A DNA stretch of 64,000 bases from Podarcis pityusensis (taxonomy: Eukaryota). Below the pieces are notes generated by a model. That model was not told the DNA's origin. It was given only the letters and a program-made list of their open reading frames with translations, and ran no database searches. The stretch lies in the NCBI GenBank assembly GCA_964106645.2, contig OZ067041.1, one strand, 5' to 3'. Within the stretch, counting starts at the first letter, position 1. Every line of letters starts with the position of its first letter. A program made the translations under genes and the position numbers. Of this stretch, positions 1 to 12,500 are shown one piece after another.

Positions 1-1
1 G

Positions 2-1093
2 GTGATTGATGTTCCCAGTGTTTTCCAGGATAACCCTAGACAACCAAGCACCTCGGAGGAGTCATCTTCTGAGGAGGAGCTGCCCCCTCAGCAGGTGGCC
101 GCTGCCAGCGACCCGGCCCCCCGTGACGACGCACCACGGGGCGGAAAGCGGAAGGCGAAGAAGCAGCACCGGTCGAAGAAAAGCAAGAAGAGGGACACTT
201 CGGACTCTGAGGAGGAAACAGGTACCTCTTCATCAGATGGGGATAGTGACACTCCAATGGAGACATATTGGGGGGAGGGGGAGGACGTTGGAGCCCCCCA
301 GTGGGTGCATGAACGGAGGGCCAACTCACACAGGAAGGCATTTAATGGCACGCTTGATTGGAAGGATGGGGCTCTGGTCCCAGACGTTAAAGTCTCAACC
401 AACGCTGCCACTGACTTTATTCTGGGGAACCACCTCTCTAAGAGGAAGAGGAACAAGATATTGAATGGCAATTACGTAGATATGTTTTCCTTGCTGCCCC
501 CAGCTCAGGTCAAGGGAAAAGGGGAAAAAATTAAGTACTATGGGAAAAGGAGGTACAGGGTACCCCGGGTAGAGCGAACGTTTGAGAATTGGCTTAATGG
601 CTATCAGGTGTTTATGGCTGTGGTGTCAAGTTGCTATCCTAAGAGGGGCGCGCACCTCGTGTCCTACCTGGCACACGTCAGGAGGGCACGGGAGCAGGCA
701 GGAGATGAAGCTGCTTTGGCGTATGATGAAGACTTTCGGAGGAATGCCTCGCTGCTGTCTTCAACGCGCTGGGACCAAAAGGACAACAATTGCTGGTTCG
801 AACATGTGGGGCTCAATATCGAGAAGAAAACCGCTCATCAGCCAAAAGCTGGTAAGGTGGAGACCCAACGCCGTAGGCAGTGCTGGGACTTCAACAAGGG
901 TATCTGTCAGCGCGTTACCTGTAAGTACCTGCACGAATGCGATAGGTGCTTAGGCAGCCACCCTGCAGTCAACTGCTTCAAAGGGAGGCAGCAGCCCTTT
1001 CGGGGGGGCAGGGGTCACCTCTCCCGGGGAAACAGGGGTGGCTCCGCCGGACCTGCAGCCCCCGCCCAAGGGCCAGCTGGGGCTCGTTACTAA
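2..1093 (+). CDS. Gag-like ORF1 (partial, open at window edge) with C-terminal CCCH plus CCHC-like zinc fingers
   Basis: CWDFNKGICQRVTCKYLHEC-DRCLGSHPAVNC motif, acidic/basic low-complexity N-terminal region, RG-rich tail; lies upstream of RT. Confidence 0.85.
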   Translation: MIDVPSVFQDNPRQPSTSEESSSEEELPPQQVAAASDPAPRDDAPRGGKRKAKKQHRSKKSKKRDTSDSEEETGTSSSDGDSDTPMETYWGEGEDVGAPQWVHERRANSHRKAFNGTLDWKDGALVPDVKVSTNAATDFILGNHLSKRKRNKILNGNYVDMFSLLPPAQVKGKGEKIKYYGKRRYRVPRVERTFENWLNGYQVFMAVVSSCYPKRGAHLVSYLAHVRRAREQAGDEAALAYDEDFRRNASLLSSTRWDQKDNNCWFEHVGLNIEKKTAHQPKAGKVETQRRRQCWDFNKGICQRVTCKYLHECDRCLGSHPAVNCFKGRQQPFRGGRGHLSRGNRGGSAGPAAPAQGPAGARY

Positions 1094-2702
1094 CATCTCC
1101 CTAGGCCTCGCGTGCTCTCTGATAAAATTGGAGCCATTGAGAGCACTCTTGAAGTTCTATCCAAATAGACGTGCAGCTCACCTACTGGAGGAAGGGTTTT
1201 CTGAAGGTTTTAGAATTCCGGTTGCTTTTACACCCAATTCCAGTTGCCCCCCTAACCAGAAATCAGTCTTAGAAAGGCCCGACATCGCGCTTAAAAAGAT
1301 ACAGAAGGAGATTACAGCCGGCAGGGTAGCCGGTCCATTCGCAACTCCGCCTATCGAGGGGCTTCATATCTCCCCGCTTGGTATTGTCCCAAAGAAGGCC
1401 CCCGGTGAATTTAGAATGATACACAACCTGTCCTATCCCAAAGGAACATCGGTTAACGACGCCATTCCCCAAGAGATGTGCACGGTGAAGTATTCTTCAT
1501 TCGATCAAGCTGTGCGGTTGGTGCGGAGCTTTGGCAGGGGCGCCTTTTTGGCAAAATGTGACATCGAGTCAGCATTTCGCCTACTCCCGGTTCACCAGGA
1601 AGACTACCGCTGGTTGGGTTTCAAATTCCAGGGAGCTTACTTCATTGACAAAGCTATGCCCATGGGTTGTTCTATTGCCTGTGCTGCGTTCGAGACCTTC
1701 AGCACATTCCTGGAATGGGCCCTAAAGTTTAGAACCGGTGCTCTAGGGGTGGGTCATTATCTCGATGATTTTATTTTGGTGGCAAGGGACGCTGGGGAGT
1801 GTAGGTCCCTCCTCCTAGCCTTCGAGTCCTTAGCCAGGGAACTGGGGGTCCCCCTGGCAGGTGAGAAGACCGAGGGTCCGGTCACTACCATGACCTACCT
1901 GGGCATTGAACTTGACACCGTAGCCCAAACCTCGCGCTTACCGGCTGAAAAATTGGTTGCCTTAAGAGAGCTTATCGGCCAAATGCTGCCCCTAAAGAAG
2001 GTCACCTTGAGACAAATTCAATCCCTCTTGGGGCACCTCAACTTTGCCTGCCGTGTAATTTCCCCCGGTCGCCCTTTCTGCGGCCGCCTGGCAAAGCTGT
2101 CCACGGGCTTACGGTCACCCCATCATAGGGTACGCATTCCCAAGGCAGTGAAGGCGGACCTCCTGGTTTGGTTGCAATTTCTGGACGGTTTCAATGGCAT
2201 ATCACTTTGGCAGGATAGTTTGGCGCTGCAGTCTGATTTCCAGGTACATTCGGATGCGGCCGGGTCCTTAGGTTTTGGGGTCTACTTCAGGGGCCAGTGG
2301 TGTGCCCAGCACTGGCCTCCCTCCTGGCAAGGTAAACCGATACTACGTGACTTGACATTCTTAGAATTCTTTCCCATCGTGGTTGCAATTCACTTATGGG
2401 AAGACCAGTTCAAGAACCATAGGGTCTGTTTTTGGACGGACAATCTAGCGGTCGTGTCAGTTTTGAATAAACAATCGTCACGCTCACCCAGAGTAGCGTC
2501 CCTTTTACGGTACTTCGTCCTCTCCTGCCTGCGGTTGAACCTTCACGCTTCAGCCAAGTTCGTCCCTGGTATTGATAATAACATCGCGGATGCTCTATCT
2601 CGTTTCCAGATGGAACGCTTTCGCTCATTGGCGCCGGATGCGCAGCAGCAGCCGCAACCATTCCCGGAGCACCTCTGGAATATTGGCAACGAGAAGCAAT
2701 AA
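1038..2702 (+). CDS. Reverse transcriptase / RNase H (pol); frame is open from 954 and overlaps gag in the +1 frame
   Basis: RT motifs SPLGIVPKK, KCDIESAFRLLP, MPMG, YLDD, YLGIELD; RNase H motifs SDAAGS, LEFFP, TDN, ADALSR. Confidence 0.95.
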   Translation: MAPPDLQPPPKGQLGLVTNISLGLACSLIKLEPLRALLKFYPNRRAAHLLEEGFSEGFRIPVAFTPNSSCPPNQKSVLERPDIALKKIQKEITAGRVAGPFATPPIEGLHISPLGIVPKKAPGEFRMIHNLSYPKGTSVNDAIPQEMCTVKYSSFDQAVRLVRSFGRGAFLAKCDIESAFRLLPVHQEDYRWLGFKFQGAYFIDKAMPMGCSIACAAFETFSTFLEWALKFRTGALGVGHYLDDFILVARDAGECRSLLLAFESLARELGVPLAGEKTEGPVTTMTYLGIELDTVAQTSRLPAEKLVALRELIGQMLPLKKVTLRQIQSLLGHLNFACRVISPGRPFCGRLAKLSTGLRSPHHRVRIPKAVKADLLVWLQFLDGFNGISLWQDSLALQSDFQVHSDAAGSLGFGVYFRGQWCAQHWPPSWQGKPILRDLTFLEFFPIVVAIHLWEDQFKNHRVCFWTDNLAVVSVLNKQSSRSPRVASLLRYFVLSCLRLNLHASAKFVPGIDNNIADALSRFQMERFRSLAPDAQQQPQPFPEHLWNIGNEKQ

Positions 2703-2710
2703 AGGGAGTA

Positions 2711-3574
2711 TTGTCTGCGCTAGCACCTTCTACCCTGAGATCGTATAATAAGGCGTGGCTAGACTTCACATCCTTCCGCATCAAAAAGGGGCGGTCCAAG
2801 CCAGGCAGGCCACCGTCCAAGTCTGAAGTCATAGAGTACATGGTCCACCTTAGAGATCTTGGCCGGGCCCCCAAAACCCTCAATATTCATTCAGCAGCTA
2901 TATCCTTCTTTTCTAAAACTTTATTTTCTGTGGATCCCTGTTCGCATTTCGTTGTGCGTAAGATGCTTGAGGGCTGGCGCAGGTCCAGGCCTCACGGCCG
3001 GGACAGGAGAAGGCCAATAACTTTAGATATACTCACCCAAATCCGTAGGAAGCTGAGGGCCCTGTGTTGGTCAAGATATGAAGCCAGGTTATTTTCAGCA
3101 GCGTTTTCTTTCGCATTTTTTGGCGCCCTACGCATAGGCGAAGTGGTTTGTGAGGACCGCGCAGCGTCCAGGGGGCTACTACTTGAGGACGTAACTGTAG
3201 ACAGGGCGCATGTAATGTTAAGAATCCGTAGTTCGAAGACTGATCAGCTTGGCAAGGGAGCCTTGGTTCGCCTCCAGGCGACTCAAAAGGCGGGCCCTTG
3301 CCCTGTAAAGGATGCTAGAAAATACCTGTGTGTAAGACCAGAACCTAGTGGCCCCTTTTTCTTGCATTCCGACGGTTCCTCCCTCTCAAAGCAGCAGTTC
3401 ACGAGGGTCATGCGCAAAGCAATTGCCGCCATCGGGCTTCCCCAAGAGGAGTACGCCGCGCACTCCTTTCGCATTGGGGCGGCGACCACCGCCGCCCATA
3501 TGGGCTTACCGGCTGAAAGAATTATGGACATGGGGCGCTGGAAATCCAACGCATTCCAGGGTTATATTCGGTAG
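2711..3574 (+). CDS. Tyrosine recombinase (phage-integrase fold); frame open from 2582, no ATG before the N-terminal domain
   Basis: Catalytic set intact: LRIGE (R), SKTDQ (K), HSFRIGAAT (HxxR), GRWKS...Y (W, Y). Confidence 0.95.
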   Translation: MSALAPSTLRSYNKAWLDFTSFRIKKGRSKPGRPPSKSEVIEYMVHLRDLGRAPKTLNIHSAAISFFSKTLFSVDPCSHFVVRKMLEGWRRSRPHGRDRRRPITLDILTQIRRKLRALCWSRYEARLFSAAFSFAFFGALRIGEVVCEDRAASRGLLLEDVTVDRAHVMLRIRSSKTDQLGKGALVRLQATQKAGPCPVKDARKYLCVRPEPSGPFFLHSDGSSLSKQQFTRVMRKAIAAIGLPQEEYAAHSFRIGAATTAAHMGLPAERIMDMGRWKSNAFQGYIR

Positions 3575-3654
3575 ACCTTCTAAATTCCCCTCAGCTTTCC
3601 CCCCGGGCACTCCTCCTGATCCGGTTCTCCGATTCTCTCTTTTCAGGTACTGGT

Positions 3655-4221
3655 GTGGTTCGACTGTGGATCCTCGGCCACAGCATCGTATATTGGGCAA
3701 AGCGGCGCGCCGAACAAAGGGGCTGGGTTGAAGAGCTACGGCTACCCAGCTGGGTCAAACTATCGTGGATCTCTAGGAGGGGTATGCGTTGGGAAGAGTT
3801 TTTCCCAGTTGTATCCAAAAAAATCGCTGCCGAGGGCCCACCCAGTGCCTTGGTCATCCAGCTGGGCGAGAACGATTTGGCGTATAGGAAAGGGGTGAAC
3901 TTGATGTGGAACATTATCAACGACTTGGAATTGTTGAGGGCATCCCATGAAAACATTACAATAATTTGGTCATCTTTGCTGGAAAGGCGATGTTGGCGGG
4001 ATGCAGAGAAACCCGTGGCTGTGAATAAAGCTAGAAGGATTGTGGAGCGCATGGTGGCACGTAGAGTGGCCGCATGGGGTGGTCGGGTCATTCAGCACCC
4101 ATGCATACGGTTTGACAAGGAAATGCTTTATCGCTGGGATGGCGTGCATCTATCTGTTGCGGGAAATGATATTTGGTTGGCTGATATTTTTCAAGGTGTT
4201 AGGGATTGGTTACAGGTCTGA
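3655..4221 (+). CDS. SGNH/GDSL-type hydrolase (esterase) ORF of the element, no ATG start
   Basis: Block I WILGHSIV, block II RGMRW, block III QLGEND, block V DGVHLS; located between YR and the 3' repeats. Confidence 0.85.
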   Translation: MVRLWILGHSIVYWAKRRAEQRGWVEELRLPSWVKLSWISRRGMRWEEFFPVVSKKIAAEGPPSALVIQLGENDLAYRKGVNLMWNIINDLELLRASHENITIIWSSLLERRCWRDAEKPVAVNKARRIVERMVARRVAAWGGRVIQHPCIRFDKEMLYRWDGVHLSVAGNDIWLADIFQGVRDWLQV

Positions 4222-4253
4222 GGGTATTGGCGGCGAGCCGGCTTGCGGCTCGG

Positions 4254-4647
4254 TGGCGGTAGGCATTGGCCGGGGTATTGTCATGCAGATGAGGTTGGGG
4301 GGGAGGAACGCCATCACCTCCCCCAATGCTTGAAGGGTAGTTCGTTAAAGGACTCCGAGGGGCGACGCCTCGTCCGAAACCTACGGAGGCTAGGGCCTAA
4401 AGCGCGCCCCCGAGCGGTAACCCCTCGGGGAGCGCCTAGGGATACGCATCTCGGGTGGCTCCCCCTGTTGGTGTTTAACCCTTCCCGGTCAGACCGGATA
4501 GTCGGTTAGGGGCCAATGCCTAAAGCCAATACCCTTCATTTCCTGTAATCAATAAAGTTGTGGCCATTTTCGCCCATTAACCTAAAACGCTGTGTCCGTT
4601 GTCTTTATTTATTCCACCTGTGGGGGGGGGAGGGAATAGCCACACAA
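4254..4647 (+). repeat. Split direct repeat B1 (394 bp)
   Basis: TGGCGGTAGGCATTGG...GCCACACAA, matches 5039-5432 at offset 785 with no difference seen by eye; AATAAA at 4551-4556. Confidence 0.95.
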
Positions 4648-5038
4648 TGCCCCTTCCGATCGTCAGGAGGAGGGGGGGTTGTGGGATCACGACCCCGCCC
4701 ACTCTCGCTCTCCCGAGGCTGGCGCCAGCCTCGCGGGAGGCAGGGATTCCCCCAATTAGCATCCCCTGTGGCGCCAGCCAATTGGCTGGCGGCAGGGGCG
4801 GGCCTTAGAAAGGCCACTTAAGGTCGGGGAAGCCCTGGCTTGCCCCTTTTCACCCTGGAGACGACGCGGTTTCCCACCCACCCGCCCTTTAGGTTTTGCC
4901 ACTGACATTGCTATGGGCTTCGGCTGGTCGCCGCAAGGGGCCTGGTAGGAGTTTTTCCATTTGGCTAATTGGCTGGTTTTGTGAGCCACTTGGTTTTTTC
5001 GCCTACCTCGTAGCAAATCGTCACAACTCCCTCGGTTT
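4648..5038 (+). repeat. Putative repeat A2 (expected copy of the element's 5' terminus; promoter-like)
   Basis: Unique segment between B1 and B2 as in the A1...B1A2B2 architecture; GC boxes and CCAAT motifs; A1 is not in the window so identity is unverified. Confidence 0.75.
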
Positions 5039-5432
5039 TGGCGGTAGGCATTGGCCGGGGTATTGTCATGCAGATGAGGTTGGGGGGGAGGAACGCCATC
5101 ACCTCCCCCAATGCTTGAAGGGTAGTTCGTTAAAGGACTCCGAGGGGCGACGCCTCGTCCGAAACCTACGGAGGCTAGGGCCTAAAGCGCGCCCCCGAGC
5201 GGTAACCCCTCGGGGAGCGCCTAGGGATACGCATCTCGGGTGGCTCCCCCTGTTGGTGTTTAACCCTTCCCGGTCAGACCGGATAGTCGGTTAGGGGCCA
5301 ATGCCTAAAGCCAATACCCTTCATTTCCTGTAATCAATAAAGTTGTGGCCATTTTCGCCCATTAACCTAAAACGCTGTGTCCGTTGTCTTTATTTATTCC
5401 ACCTGTGGGGGGGGGAGGGAATAGCCACACAA
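5039..5432 (+). repeat. Split direct repeat B2 (3' terminus of the element)
   Basis: Matches 4254-4647; AATAAA at 5336-5341 followed by a GT/T-rich tract; AT-richer host DNA begins at 5433. Confidence 0.95.
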
Positions 5433-5619
5433 GCCTCAAATCCACCTCAATACCAATAAAGTGCCTGAAGTGAATAAGGTTGGAATGAGAGGGGAAAGTG
5501 ACCTATGGTGAGGGAACAGATGAGGGCCTGAACTGCGTGGCACACACAATACATTAGAGTAACTCACAACTGTAAATTGCTGAGAACAGGGAATGAGACT
5601 CTCCATCTAGCACAATCCA

Positions 5620-6340: not shown

Positions 6341-7544
6341 GATGGGCAATGGTCAAGCAGACAGGTGACAGGCTACAACTCTCCAACCACACTGCTCTTC
6401 ACTTTTTTAAAAAAAACCTCTTCAAAAATTGCATTTTCCCAAGATGGCAAAAAGCAGCTAAGAAAAATGACCCACAGGCAGTGACGTAGGTGCTTCTATC
6501 CACCCAGCGAGCACTCCTGACTGCAGCTTCCAGCTTAAGAGAAAAACATAACCAAGGCCACACTTGTGGAAGCATTCATGCAAGCAAACATCACAAGTAG
6601 CTAGGCCTAGGTTAAGGTTGCAGAATTGTACCTTCCCACCTCCCTCCTTCCTGCAGCTGGTCTTGCCTGTGGTTAAGCAGTGTCAGCAGCAATGCTAACC
6701 ACACAAGGTTTGAAACCAAGTGTTTTTGAAATGGTTAGTACATTTGGCAGCATTGCCCCAAGTCTCTGTGCCCTCTTTACGTCTCCCAGAAGATGCCCCA
6801 TGCCCAGGCATCCACAACTTCTAGTCAATGCCCTTTGTTGTGGTTCTTTGGTCCTGTTGGTTGGGAATGTTGGACCACCATAGAAAAAAAGAGGTTTGCC
6901 AACATGCTCAGCATAGAACAGCATGTTGTTGCAGTGCTTGGGAACTGAACCCTTAATCCATAAACTACCATATACCCTAATTCAAAGAGGCAGGCTACAG
7001 AATGCAGCCAGTCTTTTTCTCTACAAGGTGCCAATTCATTCTCATTTAACACCACCTCTCTATAGGGCCCTCCTGACAACCTATTTATTGAGTGATCACC
7101 CTGATTTGCTTGCACAGAGTTTACATAGAGGTTAAACTGCTTTTAAAATTAATTTTACTGTACGTATCAGATGTATACAATATAACATAATAGTATGAGA
7201 TAACAGTGGTCCTATTACAGTGGACCCCAAAATGCTTATGGTACTATAATTTCTTGAATTCTGTTGCATCAATATGTGACAAACATGCTCCAATTTTCAA
7301 TAAAAAGGTTGCTTAGTTGCCTGCCCTCTCTCCTAACGAATTAGTTAACTTCACCATATAAACTATGTCCCAGATCCTTAAAATCCACTCTTCTAATGTT
7401 AATTCCCAGTTTGCAAGAATTGTGATACCTGCTGCTCTCAAGAGGTTATTATCATTTCTTCAGATAGGACTAGGTCTTTTACACAGTTAAATAATACAAC
7501 TGATGAATCTAATGGTAGTTTATATCCCCAGAAAGATCACTCAC

Positions 7545-7584
7545 CCGGTATCACACCCCAACAGCATTCTGGGATACTGAAAAC
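7545..7584 (-). other. Candidate 40-nt internal exon of the minus-strand host gene
   Basis: Minus strand tttctcacAG|GTTTTCAG...GATACCGG|GTgagt: good acceptor and consensus donor. Confidence 0.4.
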
Positions 7585-7904: not shown

Positions 7905-8282
7905 CCTGGGCAAGTTCAGCTCTCCACATTTCCACCTGAATTTGCAACTTGGTAAAAAAGCCCTTATTTGCCAGCATTTTAGTATGAATTTCTCTCCATG
8001 CTATTTTTTTATTTTTGCCTAATATACACATTTTTGCAAAGCAATTTTCTCTAATAAAGTGCATGTTTGTATGTCATTTCCACCAATATATGCATTTTTA
8101 TGCACACTGAACCCTATGCATTTATGTACACATTAGGTGGCTGGAGAATTGCATTGCAAAATCTGGAGAAGTGCAAAATTCGAAGGATGGATATGATTTG
8201 GTTCGCATGTTGTTTCAGAAAGCTTGAATCAGGTAGGTTTGCCTTTGAATGCAAACCAAATCAAATTTCTCCCCAATCCCTA
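7905..8282. mobile_element. Old AT-rich non-autonomous DNA-transposon-like repeat (related pieces at ~21440-21826, 42545-42846, 45210-45410, 48330-48560)
   Basis: Shared motifs atatatgcattttt, attgcaaaat..gaaagtgc and aatttctcccc.atccct among the copies. Confidence 0.5.
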
Positions 8283-9558: not shown

Positions 9559-12500
9559 CAGCCAGGCAAAAGCATTCAAGGAGGGTGCAAAGCAGGGCCA
9601 GTGAAGGGCAGGCCTAGGGGGCAGGGATAATCCCAACAGCCAGATCGGCTTGGAGTGCAAGAAATATTACCATCTTTGCCACTTTACTTATGCATCACCT
9701 TATACTATAAGTGTCTCAAGGCAACCCAAAGCACAAAACACTACATACAACAGTAAAAAAAAAAGAGATCATGCACCAATTTAAACATCCCAATCCTAGC
9801 TTTCCGTACAATCACCATGAACAGCAGACTGAAACAAACTGTTAAATAGGAGGAAAGAAAAAATAATAACAGGCAGGTGCCTGGGTGGAAATTTTCAGTC
9901 TGGTGCTGAAAAGGCAGTAATGCCAATGCCAGACAGGCCTAATTGGACAGGGCATTCCACAGACAGGGAGCCACTACTGAAAAGGCCCTCTTATGTAAAT
10001 GCCCTATGTAATTTCTCAAGTACATACCATACATATATACACTTGCCCAGAAGCACGACTGAATCCAGCTCCCTACTGAGTGCACACACTGTAAGAAACT
10101 CAGTGTTGCTTCGGTGTAACATAGAAAATTATCCCTTCTTCCTTCATCCAAGCAACATGTTGGGTACAAAGCAATATTGTTCTTGTTCTCACATAATGAT
10201 CACCTTTCTTCATTCAGATATGACAATGGGTTGCATTCAACTAACTTCTACTCAGAGCAGAGCCGCTGAAATTAATGGCCATGGTCCATGGGTTTACTCT
10301 GAGTAAACATTGGTTGACTACAACCAACCAAGTATCCCAGGGGCTGTACAAACATTCTGTGGATTTAAGATTGGTAAAGCACATGAGGACCTCATGGACC
10401 AAACAGAGAAATGGCTAATCCTAAAATGGCAGTAAAAGAAACCACAATATGCAACACAAGAGTCACCTCTATGGCCAGGTAGTAATTCGTAGTCTCATTT
10501 TGGTAAATGTGGTTGGATCCCAAAATATATCAATTCTAGTGCACCCAAAAACCTGCTAGGCCTTGGTGTCCATGTAAGCAGCTTTCATTGTGGCATTGGA
10601 TCAATTAAATAATCTGCCGTACAGTGAACCAAAGGCATCAGAGATTTACTTTGGTTGAGAAGACACTGAAGGTACTGAAGAGCCTTGCCAGATTCTAGCA
10701 CACTGAGTTTCTGCTCTGGGTGGGTTGATGCTTCTGCCAGATTCTTGGCATCGATTCCAGAACCCTGCAACATCCCTCATCTAAACCAAACCTGGTTGTG
10801 GGCTCACACACTGAGTTGCCTAGCAATGACAGTGTGATTATTCCTCCTCCTTTTCAGTCTAACCAAGTAGCTGAATTGGCACAGGAGGCAGCAGCAAAGC
10901 AGCAAATGGAGGATGCACAGAGGCCTGGCCTGCTGCCCATACCTCGGCCTGCCTTGGGAAATTAGGGTTTAACTTAGCATGGATGCCGATGGGTAACACC
11001 TATATGGAGAGGGCAGGGTGTGACAAAGGAGCAGCAAAAGGCAGGGACAGAATGATATAGTTAATCTTTTAATATTCATTTAACGCTAACTGGGTGTGCT
11101 AATCATAATTTTTGTTGTTTAAGCACAGCGAAGCAGTAATGCTACAGCTAACTGGGAGGTTATTCTGCTATTGTAGCCTGAGAAGATAGGAGGCTTGGTG
11201 CCATAAAGTGTTCCCACCTGTCTAGCTTCAGCCAGGCAGTATAGGCATGGAAGATCTCTATGGTCTGATCTCTATGTCCCAGACATTCAAAATCTGGGAA
11301 CGGCTGGTGAATGGTGCAGACACCCACACCCACCTTCTCCAGACCACAACAGGGCTTGTGCTTGTTTTGCTCAGGAACCTTGAGAGATTTTGCTGGGAAA
11401 GGAGGAGCCAATTGGTTACGGCAGTGTCTACCCCTCTTCTGCCTTCAACTTGGCTCTCTCAGTGCTCAGCTCAAGTTGCTTGGCTTCGGAACCTCAGTCT
11501 GTGGTCAGAGAGAGAAAGATGAATTATGGCAGCATGAGCCCTGGGTGAGACCATTAGTAGCTGGTGGCGGGTGGAGTGGAGATACACTGCCCAGCCCAAC
11601 CCGATCCCTTTCCAGCTGTTTCTGTCTTTTAGGGCTGTTGGGAGGTTTAAGAAATAACAAGAGCCCAGATGGATCCGACTACGGGCTCTTCAAATCCAGC
11701 ATGCTGTTTGGAACAGCGACCAGCCATATGCTGCTGGGAAGCTTAAAAGTCAGTAAGCCTTCCTCTGTTATCTGTCCCCAGTATCCAACATGCAGAGACA
11801 CCAGCATCACTCGACAACAAAATGTTGCAGCACGCAGTGCTTCTGGCTCAGGTTTCTAGCCACTTCATTTCATCCACCCCCTCATTTCCCTTCCTCTCCA
11901 GTCATTCTGTGCTCAATGTGCAAGCTCCATCCTCACGTGCTGTTTTGGAGTTTGTTTCTTCTTCTTTACTTCTTTGAGGGGGTGGGCATTGGACAGACTT
12001 GTGCCCAATCCCAGCTGCATTAATTCTTTACTCAATGGGCAAATCTCCTGGTGAACTGGTTATAGAGCATCACACTTGGACTGGAGAGACCCAGGTCCAA
12101 ATCCCACTACAGCCATCAACTCACTGGGAGACCTTGGAGCACTCACTATCTCAATCTAACCTACTTTACAGGGTTGTTGTGAGGATAAAAAGGAAGGGGG
12201 AAAAGAAAGCCATGAACACAGCCTTGGACTTCCTGGAGGAAATGTGGGGCACAAATGTAGTAAGAAACTAAAATTGTTTCTAAATTCCCCATTGAGAACT
12301 ATGCAAAGTTCTCTCTTTCATTCTACCCTCTCATCCTGTTCCAGCCACTATTTTCAGTAGAGAATCAACAAGGTTGAGATGATTTAAATGAACTGTATTT
12401 AAATTATGTTTTCATTTATTTAATCAAGTAGAAAGAGAGTAAATAAAAGAAGTGCTTTATAGGTATGTTAAGCGGTTTTATGGTACAACGGCGGCTTGGC

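What the first reader, a model, noticed from the sequence alone, without database searches (positions are those of the whole stretch)
4205..4556. Long-range stem that masks the poly(A) signal in B1 but cannot form in B2
Seen: ATTGGTTACAGG (4205-4216) pairs with CCTGTAATCAAT (4542-4553, one G-U pair), and AGGGTATTGGC (4221-4231) pairs perfectly with GCCAATACCCT (4525-4535). The 3' arm covers the first three bases of AATAAA (4551-4556). The 5' arm lies outside the repeat, in the end of the SGNH ORF, so the identical AATAAA in B2 (5336-5341) has no partner. Known: the genomic RNA must read through B1 to include A2-B2, and HIV-1 suppresses its 5' poly(A) site with an occluding hairpin. Inference: an RNA switch choosing between full-length genomic RNA (ending in B2) and shorter mRNAs (ending in B1).
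Basis: partly seen in the sequence, partly recalled or inferred. Interest (0 to 1): 0.85.

Follow-up and report, generated by a model that had tools for sequence, protein, structure and literature searches.

The report
Conserved RNA stems flanking Ngaro poly(A) signal

Summary
The arms are exactly where stated. The fold recovers them, and no shuffle or other window pairs as well (0/2000, 0/2087). It is conserved. Ten related squamate Ngaro elements have a helix in the same place, often with different sequences. Pair counts show 92% pairing, against 29-44% in slid controls, with 6 compensatory pairs, and wobbles are G.U and never A.C, which points to plus-strand RNA. In all five complete elements that have the stem, the 5' arm lies just outside the B repeat.

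"B2 has no partner" is not right. A unique motif 9 nt before B2 (5020-5028, GTCACAACT) is complementary to AGUUGUGGC, which starts at the last base of AAUAAA. This helix is 9-13 bp in five lineages, but covariation is thin. The same 5' arm can also pair with B2's identical 3' arm.

The two unique arms target adjacent halves of the poly(A) signal region. Predicted hexamer accessibility does not consistently favour masking of B1, and the alternative arrangements differ by no more than 11 kcal/mol.

Control of poly(A) site choice is the best hypothesis (about 0.4), and it is unproven. No transcript data were available.

The parts
3655..4221 (+). SGNH/GDSL-hydrolase ORF, the last ORF of the Ngaro element. 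Its last codons (..RDWLQV*) carry the H1 5' arm.
   Evidence: ORF list; weak Pfam PF13472 hit; homologues in Podarcis and a newt; C-termini.
4205..4216 (+). H1 5' arm (ATTGGTTACAGG). Unique sequence, outside the B repeat.
4220..4231 (+). H2 5' arm (GAGGGTATTGGC). It overlaps the last two bases of the stop codon (TGA 4219-4221). Unique sequence, outside B.
   Evidence: A helix is present at this position in all 10 stem-bearing elements.
4234..4252 (+). Small GC hairpin (CGAGCCG / CGGCTCG) between the H2 arm and the start of B1. Conserved in position.
   Evidence: RNAalifold pairs 42-46 with 55-59.
4254..4647 (+). B1 repeat, 394 nt and 100% identical to B2.
4260..4271 (+). H3 5' arm (inside B, so present in both copies). 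It pairs with 4511-4522.
   Evidence: 4 pairs with compensatory changes.
4511..4522 (+). H3 3' arm.
4525..4536 (+). H2 3' arm (GCCAATACCCTT), 15-26 nt before the hexamer.
4542..4553 (+). H1 3' arm (CCTGTAATCAAT). It contains a UGUA and the first 3 nt of AAUAAA.
   Evidence: pair probabilities 0.78-0.99.
4551..4556 (+). AATAAA of B1, the putative poly(A) signal.
   Evidence: Conserved at 306-387 nt after the SGNH stop in all nine SGNH-bearing relatives with enough 3' sequence except the snake element; usually followed by GTTGTGGCC.
4556..4564 (+). Target of the X motif in B1 (AGTTGTGGC). It lies 2 nt after the H1 target.
4591..4610 (+). GU/U-rich stretch, a candidate downstream element of the poly(A) site.
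   Evidence: Sequence, and conservation in relatives. Inference only.
4648..5038 (+). A2 plus a unique segment X that lies between A2 and B2.
   Evidence: The A1 copy lies outside the window.
5020..5028 (+). X motif (GTCACAACT). It occurs once in the element, ends 9 nt before B2, and is complementary to AGUUGUGGC.
5039..5432 (+). B2 repeat. The element ends at 5432 (..CCACACAA).
5336..5349 (+). AATAAA of B2 (5336-5341) and the X-motif target (5341-5349).

Best explanation
The 3' end of this Ngaro retrotransposon encodes a plus-strand RNA structure that makes its two identical poly(A) sites non-equivalent. It does this with two unique arms.

Arm 1 is the end of the SGNH ORF plus the stop-codon region (4205-4231). 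It pairs with the B segment that ends at the third base of AAUAAA. This closes the ~300-nt B domain as helices H1 and H2, with H3 nested inside.

Arm 2 is the X motif (5020-5028), just before B2. It is complementary to the B segment that starts at the last base of the hexamer.

Most likely mechanism: during transcription, arm 1 pairs with B1 as soon as B1's 3' arm emerges. It covers the UGUA and the AAU of the hexamer. Arm 2 emerges before B2 exists and can pair with the still uncleaved B1 flank. The poly(A) signal of B1 is thereby hidden or weakened, and polymerase reads on through A2. B2 then emerges with both arms already occupied and is the site that is used. The result is the longer-than-unit-length genomic RNA that the split-repeat architecture requires.

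Shown: the helices, their conservation and covariation, their strand, the position of the arms outside the repeats, and the two targets meeting at the hexamer.

Inferred: that AATAAA is the working poly(A) signal, that pairing lowers its use, the order of folding, and which B copy each arm occupies in vivo.
For: Structure beyond chance in the window.

The stem is significant in 8 elements: the six lacertid-type elements including the window, and Anolis (z -4.2 to -5.9, 0/1000 shuffles as good), plus Sphaerodactylus (0/1000).

Covariation: 92.2% of cells pair, against 29-44% when partners are slid. Six pairs change on both sides, against 1-2 in the slid controls. The covariation score is 0.170, against 0.03-0.07 slid, and 0/500 shuffles reach it. 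RNAalifold independently predicts H1, H2 and H3.

H2 is kept with different sequences:
- L004: TGTGAGTGGTT/AACCACTCACA
- L007: AGGAGCGTTGGCG/CGCCAATGCTCCT
- Anolis: GGGGTTGGCGGC/GCTGCCAACCCC

There are 15 G.U cells and no A.C cells, which indicates the plus strand.

The 5' arm is outside B in all five complete elements that have the stem. B1-upstream duplexes are -44.7 to -55.1 kcal/mol; B2-upstream duplexes are -14.2 to -24.6.

The Anolis element lacks the SGNH ORF. It has still evolved a non-coding 5' arm that pairs with the entire AAUAAA.

The X motif is unique in each element. It gives 9-13 bp in five lineages (3 to 33 of 1000 shuffles as good). The snake element has an unrelated pair at the same position.

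The targets of the two arms abut at the hexamer in every lineage.

No conserved plus-strand 5' splice-site motif exists in A2/X that could do the job through U1.
Against: No transcript or 3'-end data were available.

H1 covers only 3 of the 6 hexamer bases in the window. L004 and L007 lack a convincing hexamer-touching helix. The snake element shows no arm-1 stem.

In isolated contexts the hexamer is predicted to be less open in B1 only in the window and Anolis, and less open in B2 in L003, L006 and L007.

Equilibrium folding of the whole 3' region favours the swapped arrangement (arm 1 with B2, X with B1) in 4 of 5 elements. The double-clamp arrangement is 1.7-8.1 kcal/mol worse than the best constrained arrangement.

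The X helix has almost no covariation: one compensatory pair, with 202/500 shuffles as good. In the window it is only 9 bp (33/1000 shuffles as good).
Confidence: 0.4

Rival explanations
1. The helices organise the 3' end of the genomic RNA for replication and not for poly(A) site choice. Each B domain, or the whole B1-A2-X-B2 region in the swapped panhandle, is closed into a defined fold. That fold serves reverse-transcriptase entry at the 3' end, strand transfer between the B copies, or packaging by the zinc-finger Gag.
For: H2 and H3, the most conserved helices, do not touch the hexamer. The enclosed B domain has its own conserved, covarying hairpins. After cleavage in B2, the X:B2 helix would lie about 10-25 nt from the RNA 3' end, the estimated distance from the helix to the expected cleavage site. 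Equilibrium folding prefers a large panhandle in 4 of 5 elements. DIRS-1 is known to need an internal complementary region to complete retrotransposition (PMC7192593).
Against: This does not explain why both unique arms are aimed at the two halves of the poly(A) signal region in every lineage. It also does not explain why Anolis evolved pairing across the entire AAUAAA. If every B copy needed closure, an arm inside the repeat would be the simpler solution.
Confidence: 0.3
2. The polarity is the opposite of the reader's model. The B1 stem presents or activates the B1 site by bringing the stop codon and the poly(A) site together on mRNAs that end in B1, while the X motif masks the B2 hexamer. 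The structure would then tune the mRNA-to-genomic RNA ratio in favour of B1.
For: In isolated contexts the hexamer is predicted to be more paired in B2 than in B1 in L003, L006 and L007. There, X covers hexamer bases 2-6 with probability 0.9-1.0. In L007, H2 competes with a local hairpin that would otherwise hold the AAUAAA.
Against: In the window and Anolis the prediction is the reverse. In Anolis there is no ORF stop next to the stem. An element that mostly ended its RNA in B1 could not regenerate the end of B and the start of A. This last point is an inference from the published architecture.
Confidence: 0.12
3. The complementarity is not an RNA device. It could be a DNA-level inverted repeat, for example recombinase or CCAAT-box protein sites, or a by-product of coding constraint and repeated GCCAAT-type motifs.
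For: The arms are rich in ATTGG/CCAAT motifs, repeated in both orientations. The H1 5' arm is coding sequence with a conserved DWL peptide. In the window the minus strand folds with a similar z-score (-3.1).
Against: There are compensatory changes, and H2 arms with entirely different sequences that lack CCAAT. Wobbles are G.U only, 15 cells against 0 A.C. Sphaerodactylus keeps the RDWL coding, while both H1 arms differ in sequence from the window's and still pair. Anolis has the stem without the ORF.
Confidence: 0.06

Closest known systems
HIV-1 poly(A) hairpin (PMC2645353)
   Same: A retroelement carries the same AAUAAA twice in one transcript, and the upstream copy must be bypassed. RNA structure that includes the hexamer represses its use, and strengthening the structure inhibits polyadenylation.
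   Different: The HIV hairpin is a short local stem inside R, so it is present at both ends. Discrimination there comes from surrounding enhancers and from the splice donor (own knowledge). Here the arms lie outside the repeat, about 330 nt and about 310-465 nt from their targets. They are context-specific and only partly cover the hexamer. Function here is untested.
Internal complementary region (ICR) of DIRS-1 (PMC7192593)
   Same: It is also an internal, unique sequence in a tyrosine-recombinase retrotransposon that is complementary to parts of the terminal repeats. It was shown experimentally to be essential for retrotransposition.
   Different: The ICR is thought to bridge the ends of a single-stranded cDNA so that a full-length element is rebuilt. 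The Ngaro arms pair within the plus-strand RNA (G.U wobbles), and their targets flank the poly(A) hexamer, not the element termini.
HTLV-1/BLV Rex-responsive element in the 3' LTR (own knowledge, not checked here)
   Same: A structured domain of about 250-300 nt sits next to the poly(A) signal of a retroelement repeat, and its folding determines how the signal works.
   Different: There the fold brings a distant AAUAAA close to the cleavage site and so activates it. Here the hexamer is already at a normal distance from the likely cleavage region.
Ngaro split-direct-repeat architecture, A1-ORFs-B1A2B2 (PMC9210276, PMC8547959)
   Same: The element is a typical vertebrate Ngaro with Gag, RT/RNase H, YR and SGNH ORFs and B1-A2-B2 repeats.
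   Different: Within the searchable library, published descriptions mention the repeats and solo AB derivatives. They do not mention long-range RNA pairing, a unique X segment, or poly(A) site choice.

Membership tests
Ngaro (tyrosine-recombinase retrotransposon, order DIRS) | Reverse transcriptase/RNase H ORF | tested here: met
   Window 1038-2702 matches Pfam RVT_1 (E 4e-13, 50 bits, cutoff 29.6).
Ngaro (tyrosine-recombinase retrotransposon, order DIRS) | Tyrosine recombinase in place of a DDE integrase | tested here: met
   Window 2711-3574 matches Pfam Phage_integrase at 25.6 bits, just under the 27.1 cutoff. It has 542 homologues at E<=1e-20, many named 'integrase/recombinase XerD homolog'.
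Ngaro (tyrosine-recombinase retrotransposon, order DIRS) | Split direct repeats A1 ... B1 A2 B2 | tested here: inconclusive
   B1 and B2 are 394 nt and 100% identical, with 391 nt between them. A1 lies beyond the left edge of the window, so the A1=A2 identity cannot be seen here. It is seen in relatives L006, L007, L008 and L011.
Ngaro (tyrosine-recombinase retrotransposon, order DIRS) | No methyltransferase domain; an SGNH hydrolase ORF after the YR in vertebrate members | tested here: met
   The four ORFs give only zinc-finger, RVT_1, Phage_integrase and GDSL_2 Pfam hits. The SGNH ORF has homologues in lizards and a newt. The literature describes the hydrolase ORF.
Poly(A)-signal occlusion by RNA structure (HIV-1 type) | The hexamer is base-paired in a stable, conserved structure | tested here: inconclusive
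   In the window, 3 of 6 bases are paired by H1 (probability 0.78-0.99). All 6 are paired in Anolis and none convincingly in L004 and L007. The structure itself is conserved with covariation.
Poly(A)-signal occlusion by RNA structure (HIV-1 type) | The site to be bypassed is more occluded than the site that is used | tested here: inconclusive
   Opening energy, B1 against B2: window 2.56 against 1.19 kcal/mol; Anolis 4.78 against 0.83; but L003 3.55 against 5.25; L006 2.84 against 4.62; L007 0.86 against 6.41. The alternative arrangements lie within 0-11 kcal/mol.
Poly(A)-signal occlusion by RNA structure (HIV-1 type) | Destabilising the stem raises use of the site, and compensatory changes restore repression | not testable with these tools
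   This needs reporter or 3'-end sequencing experiments.
Any described RNA family (Rfam 15) | A match to a curated covariance model | tested here: not met
   No match at E<=1 in 3600-5500. No match at gathering score anywhere in the window.

The most novel reading that the evidence does not exclude
A co-transcriptional 'double clamp'. Two unique RNA arms lie outside the repeats: one upstream of B1, and one between B1 and B2. They successively pair with the two halves of the B1 poly(A) signal region and silence it. This would be a purely RNA-encoded way, dependent on the order of transcription, to tell two identical poly(A) sites apart. It would be the missing cis-element in the replication model of split-direct-repeat retrotransposons.
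Probability: 0.25. Interest if true: 0.8.

Novelty: new variant of a known kind. Interest (0 to 1): 0.62.

Why it matters
Ngaro and PAT-like elements must make an RNA that runs through one copy of their 3' repeat and stops in the next identical copy. How they do this has not been addressed in the literature I could search. Only sequences outside the repeats can tell the two copies apart. This work identifies two such sequences, conserved across lizard families, both aimed at the poly(A) signal. That turns a vague replication model into a concrete experiment with defined nucleotides to mutate and restore. It would also add a long-range, order-of-transcription mechanism to the known ways of choosing between poly(A) sites. 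If the helices instead serve reverse transcription or packaging, they would still be, as far as I could find, the first cis-acting RNA structure defined for this retrotransposon order.

Tried and rejected
(1) A U1/5' splice-site signal in A2 as the B1 suppressor. No plus-strand match of 7 or more of 9 positions in A2/X, except one in Anolis.

(2) The B2-less copies (L001, L002, L004, L009, L010) as retrocopies of B1-terminated RNA. Rejected: B runs to its natural end (..CCACRCAA) with no A-tail. They look like B1xB2 deletion products.

(3) A stop-codon/NMD geometry role. Weakened, because Anolis keeps the stem without an adjacent ORF stop.

(4) A minus-strand or DNA structure. In the window alone the minus strand folds with a similar z-score, but the relatives show only G.U wobbles.

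(5) Equilibrium accessibility as a test of masking. The results were inconsistent between elements.

(6) More relatives. Newt DNA was not retrievable. L005 ends 218 nt after the stop codon. Metagenome and viral collections held no relative.

(7) Rfam: nothing.

(8) Literature on Ngaro RNA structure or polyadenylation: nothing found.

(9) MAFFT misaligned the arms of the gecko and Anolis elements. These were therefore analysed element by element and left out of the pair counts.

The consensus lines that the alignment tool prints were not used. No exon joining was attempted for the possible spliced SGNH mRNA.

Full report
WHAT IS IN THE WINDOW

Window 1-5432 is the 3' 5.4 kb of an Ngaro-type tyrosine-recombinase retrotransposon.
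- A Gag-like ORF with a CCCH zinc finger (2-1093; its start is cut by the window edge).
- RT/RNase H (1038-2702), the tyrosine recombinase (2711-3574) and an SGNH/GDSL hydrolase ORF (3655-4221).
- Then B1 (4254-4647), A2 plus a unique segment X (4648-5038), and B2 (5039-5432).
- B1 and B2 are 394 nt long and 100% identical.
- The element has 54% GC and CpG o/e 0.70, against 45% and 0.32 for the rest of the window. With intact ORFs, this indicates a young insertion.
- The closest named relatives are in the wall lizard Podarcis muralis, then other lizards. The host is a squamate, not human.

CHECK OF THE OBSERVATION

- The MFE fold of 4200-4650 contains both helices and a third one nested inside them. 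I call them H1 (4205-4216 with 4542-4553), H2 (4220-4231 with 4525-4536) and H3 (4260-4271 with 4511-4522). Together they close a domain of about 300 nt, at -198.6 kcal/mol and z -3.2.
- The same length of sequence around B2 folds to -171.4 kcal/mol, z -0.8.
- The duplex between the 59 nt before B1 and the 56 nt ending at the hexamer is -48.7 kcal/mol. None of 2000 dinucleotide shuffles (mean -28.8, sd 4.1) and none of 2087 other windows matched it.

CONSERVATION

I fetched eleven related elements: from Podarcis (L001-L004, L009), Lacerta (L006), Eublepharis (L007), Anolis (L008), Sphaerodactylus (L010), a snake (L011), and one contig that was too short to use (L005). SGNH protein identity to the window ranges from 77% down to 37%.
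- All SGNH-bearing elements with enough sequence, except the snake, have an AATAAA 306-387 nt after the stop codon. It is usually followed by GTTGTGGCC.
- The six lacertid-type elements (the window, L001, L002, L003, L006, L009), Anolis and Sphaerodactylus have a highly significant long-range stem. For the first seven, z is -4.2 to -5.9 and 0/1000 shuffles are as good. For Sphaerodactylus 0/1000 are as good.
- L007 is weaker (z -2.6), L004 weaker still (z -1.4), and the snake shows nothing.
- H2 is present in all ten stem-bearing elements, always just after the stop codon and ending 11-16 nt before the hexamer. Its sequence often differs: TGTGAGTGGTT/AACCACTCACA in L004, AGGAGCGTTGGCG/CGCCAATGCTCCT in L007 and GGGGTTGGCGGC/GCTGCCAACCCC in Anolis.
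- H1 reaches hexamer bases 1-3 in the lacertid-type elements and in Sphaerodactylus. The Sphaerodactylus arms differ in sequence from the window's: ATTGGC/GTTAAT plus GAAGGC/GCTTTC.
- In Anolis the helix TTTATTGA/TCAATAAA pairs with the whole hexamer.

On the alignment of the seven cleanly alignable elements (A2):
- 92.2% of cells pair, against 29-44% when partners are slid.
- Six pairs change on both sides, against 1-2 in the slid controls and with 2/500 shuffles as high.
- No shuffle reaches the covariation score of 0.170.
- RNAalifold predicts H1, H2, H3 and the small hairpin without being told.
- Non-Watson-Crick cells in the properly aligned rows are G.U (15 cells) and never A.C. The selected structure is therefore on the plus strand, which means RNA.

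THE B1-SPECIFIC CLAIM

- In all five complete elements that have the stem (the window, L003, L006, L007, L008), the 5' arm lies immediately outside the repeat.
- B1 starts 35-40 nt after the stop codon, after a small GC hairpin.
- The 70 nt before B1 pair with the 3' arm at -44.7 to -55.1 kcal/mol. The 70 nt before B2 reach only -14.2 to -24.6 kcal/mol.
- The Anolis element has no SGNH ORF, yet it keeps the same layout with a non-coding arm.

When I asked what the hexamer pairs with in the B2 context, the answer was a conserved motif that ends 0-11 nt before B2. That motif is GTCACAACT(TTGT). It is the reverse complement of (AT)AAAGTTGTGGC, which is the 3' part of the hexamer plus its conserved flank.
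- The helix is 13 bp in Lacerta and Eublepharis, 11 bp in L003, 10 bp in Anolis and 9 bp in the window (5020-5028 with 5341-5349).
- Between 3 and 33 of 1000 shuffles are as good.
- The snake element has an unrelated pair (GGTCATTT/AAATGACC) at the same position, which is not significant on its own.
- The motif occurs once per element.
- Covariation is thin: one compensatory pair in Anolis and one A-U to G.U change in Eublepharis. 90% of cells pair, against 33-49% slid, but 202/500 shuffles are as good. I therefore grade this helix as conserved complementarity, not as proven structure.
- Its target begins where the H1 target ends, separated by 0-2 nt or overlapping by at most 2 nt, in every lineage with H1. 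The two unique arms address adjacent halves of the poly(A) signal region.

WHICH ARM PAIRS WITH WHICH B COPY

Because B1 and B2 are identical, each arm can pair with either copy.
- Partition-function folding of the whole 3' region, from the SGNH end to 30 nt past the B2 hexamer, predicts a swapped, nested arrangement in four of five elements, including the window. In it, arm 1 pairs with B2 and X pairs with B1. L006 is predicted to form the local arrangement.
- Constrained MFEs for the local, swapped and double-clamp (both arms on B1) arrangements differ by 0-11 kcal/mol, out of -500 to -670 kcal/mol. This is inside the error of the energy model.
- Hexamer opening energies in isolated contexts favour masking of B1 in the window and Anolis, and masking of B2 in L003, L006 and L007.
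- Thermodynamics therefore cannot decide. Co-transcriptional order can suggest an answer. Arm 1 meets B1 first, and X emerges before B2 exists and could pair with the uncleaved B1 flank. This would leave B2 without partners. That ordering is an inference.

FUNCTION

Published descriptions give the A1-ORFs-B1A2B2 architecture, the SGNH ORF and solo AB repeats (PMC9210276, PMC8547959, PMC4157794). For DIRS-1 they show that an internal complementary region is essential for retrotransposition (PMC7192593). I found nothing on RNA structure or poly(A) site choice in Ngaro.

The requirement to read through B1 follows from the architecture. Only an RNA that includes the B1-A2 junction carries the end of B and the start of A.

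Within about 300 nt upstream and about 95 nt downstream, the two poly(A) sites are identical. Only outside sequences can distinguish them, and the two conserved outside sequences found here both target the signal. No conserved plus-strand 5' splice-site motif in A2/X offers a U1-based alternative.

I therefore rank control of poly(A) site choice first, at about 0.4. The HIV-1 poly(A) hairpin is the nearest precedent (PMC2645353).
- A role in genomic-RNA architecture for reverse transcription or packaging comes second, at about 0.3.
- The opposite polarity, in which B1 is favoured, gets about 0.12.
- A DNA-level or by-product explanation gets about 0.06.

LIMITS

- There are only 12 elements, several of them from one genome.
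- The helices in the gecko and Anolis elements were scored element by element, because MAFFT misplaced their arms.
- No transcript data could be examined.
- A1 lies outside the window.

Noticed in passing
window 4866-5038 (approximate) and 5020-5028; L006 8178-8351; L007 8243-8291; L008 7790-7913: Between A2 and B2 there is a unique, non-repeated segment X that is absent after A1, so the layout is A1-ORFs-B1-A2-X-B2. X is conserved among the lacertid-type elements. It ends in (A)TCGTCACAACT in the lizard elements with a B2, including gecko and Anolis. Besides pairing with the poly(A) flank, it could be a plus-strand primer site.
   Followed up: partly
L007 ~7990-8005; L008 ~7540-7555; L011 ~10885-10900: The first ~25 nt of A in the gecko, Anolis and snake elements share GACTTACC(T/C)GG. 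This is identical to the 5' end of U1 snRNA, and on the minus strand it reads as a perfect 5' splice site (CAG|GTAAGT). It is absent from the window, L003 and L006. Its meaning is unknown.
   Followed up: no
L001 12607-12700; L002 6881-6960; L004 6499-6600; L009 10181-10270; L010 5287-5400: Five of the eleven relatives are A1-ORFs-B only. B runs to its natural end (..CCACRCAA), and there is no A-tail, A2 or B2. They are most simply explained as B1xB2 recombination deletions, analogous to solo LTRs. They are not copies of RNAs that ended in B1.
   Followed up: partly
window 3636-3656: The sequence tctcttttcag|GT just before the SGNH ORF looks like a splice acceptor. NCBI gene models in Podarcis (P0003, P0004) splice into the homologous ORF, so the SGNH protein may come from a spliced subgenomic mRNA. 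No exon joining was attempted.
   Followed up: no
window ~4340-4362 (inside B1; same position in B2): The B domain contains a hairpin with the conserved loop motif GTTAAAGGA(A/C)TCC, found in all lacertid-type elements. RNAalifold also finds several further covarying hairpins inside B. B is a structured RNA domain in its own right.
   Followed up: partly
window 4204-4270 and 4511-4535: The arms are built from repeated CCAAT/ATTGG-type units: GGTATTGGC outside B, GGCATTGGCC inside B, and the tandem GCCAATGCC and GCCAATACC. H2 and H3 therefore look like a duplicated helix. The H2 5' arm can also pair with the H3 3' arm (10 bp with 2 G.U).
   Followed up: partly
L003 6604-6623: In L003 the sequence just before B2 carries GGTATTGG, a copy of the H2 5' arm without the small hairpin. 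An H2-like helix could therefore also form in the B2 context of that element.
   Followed up: no
L007 7845-7861; L004 6485-6505: In L007 (Eublepharis) and in Podarcis L004, the two elements that lack a clear H1, the AAUAAA can sit in a short local hairpin inside B (L007: CUUUGUUA/UAAUAAAG). It would be present in both B copies, as the HIV-1 poly(A) hairpin is. In L007, H2 competes with this hairpin.
   Followed up: partly
window 5433-64000: The rest of the window has 45% GC and CpG o/e 0.32. It has no N runs, no Rfam match at gathering score and no further copy of the B 3' segment. It was not examined otherwise.
   Followed up: no
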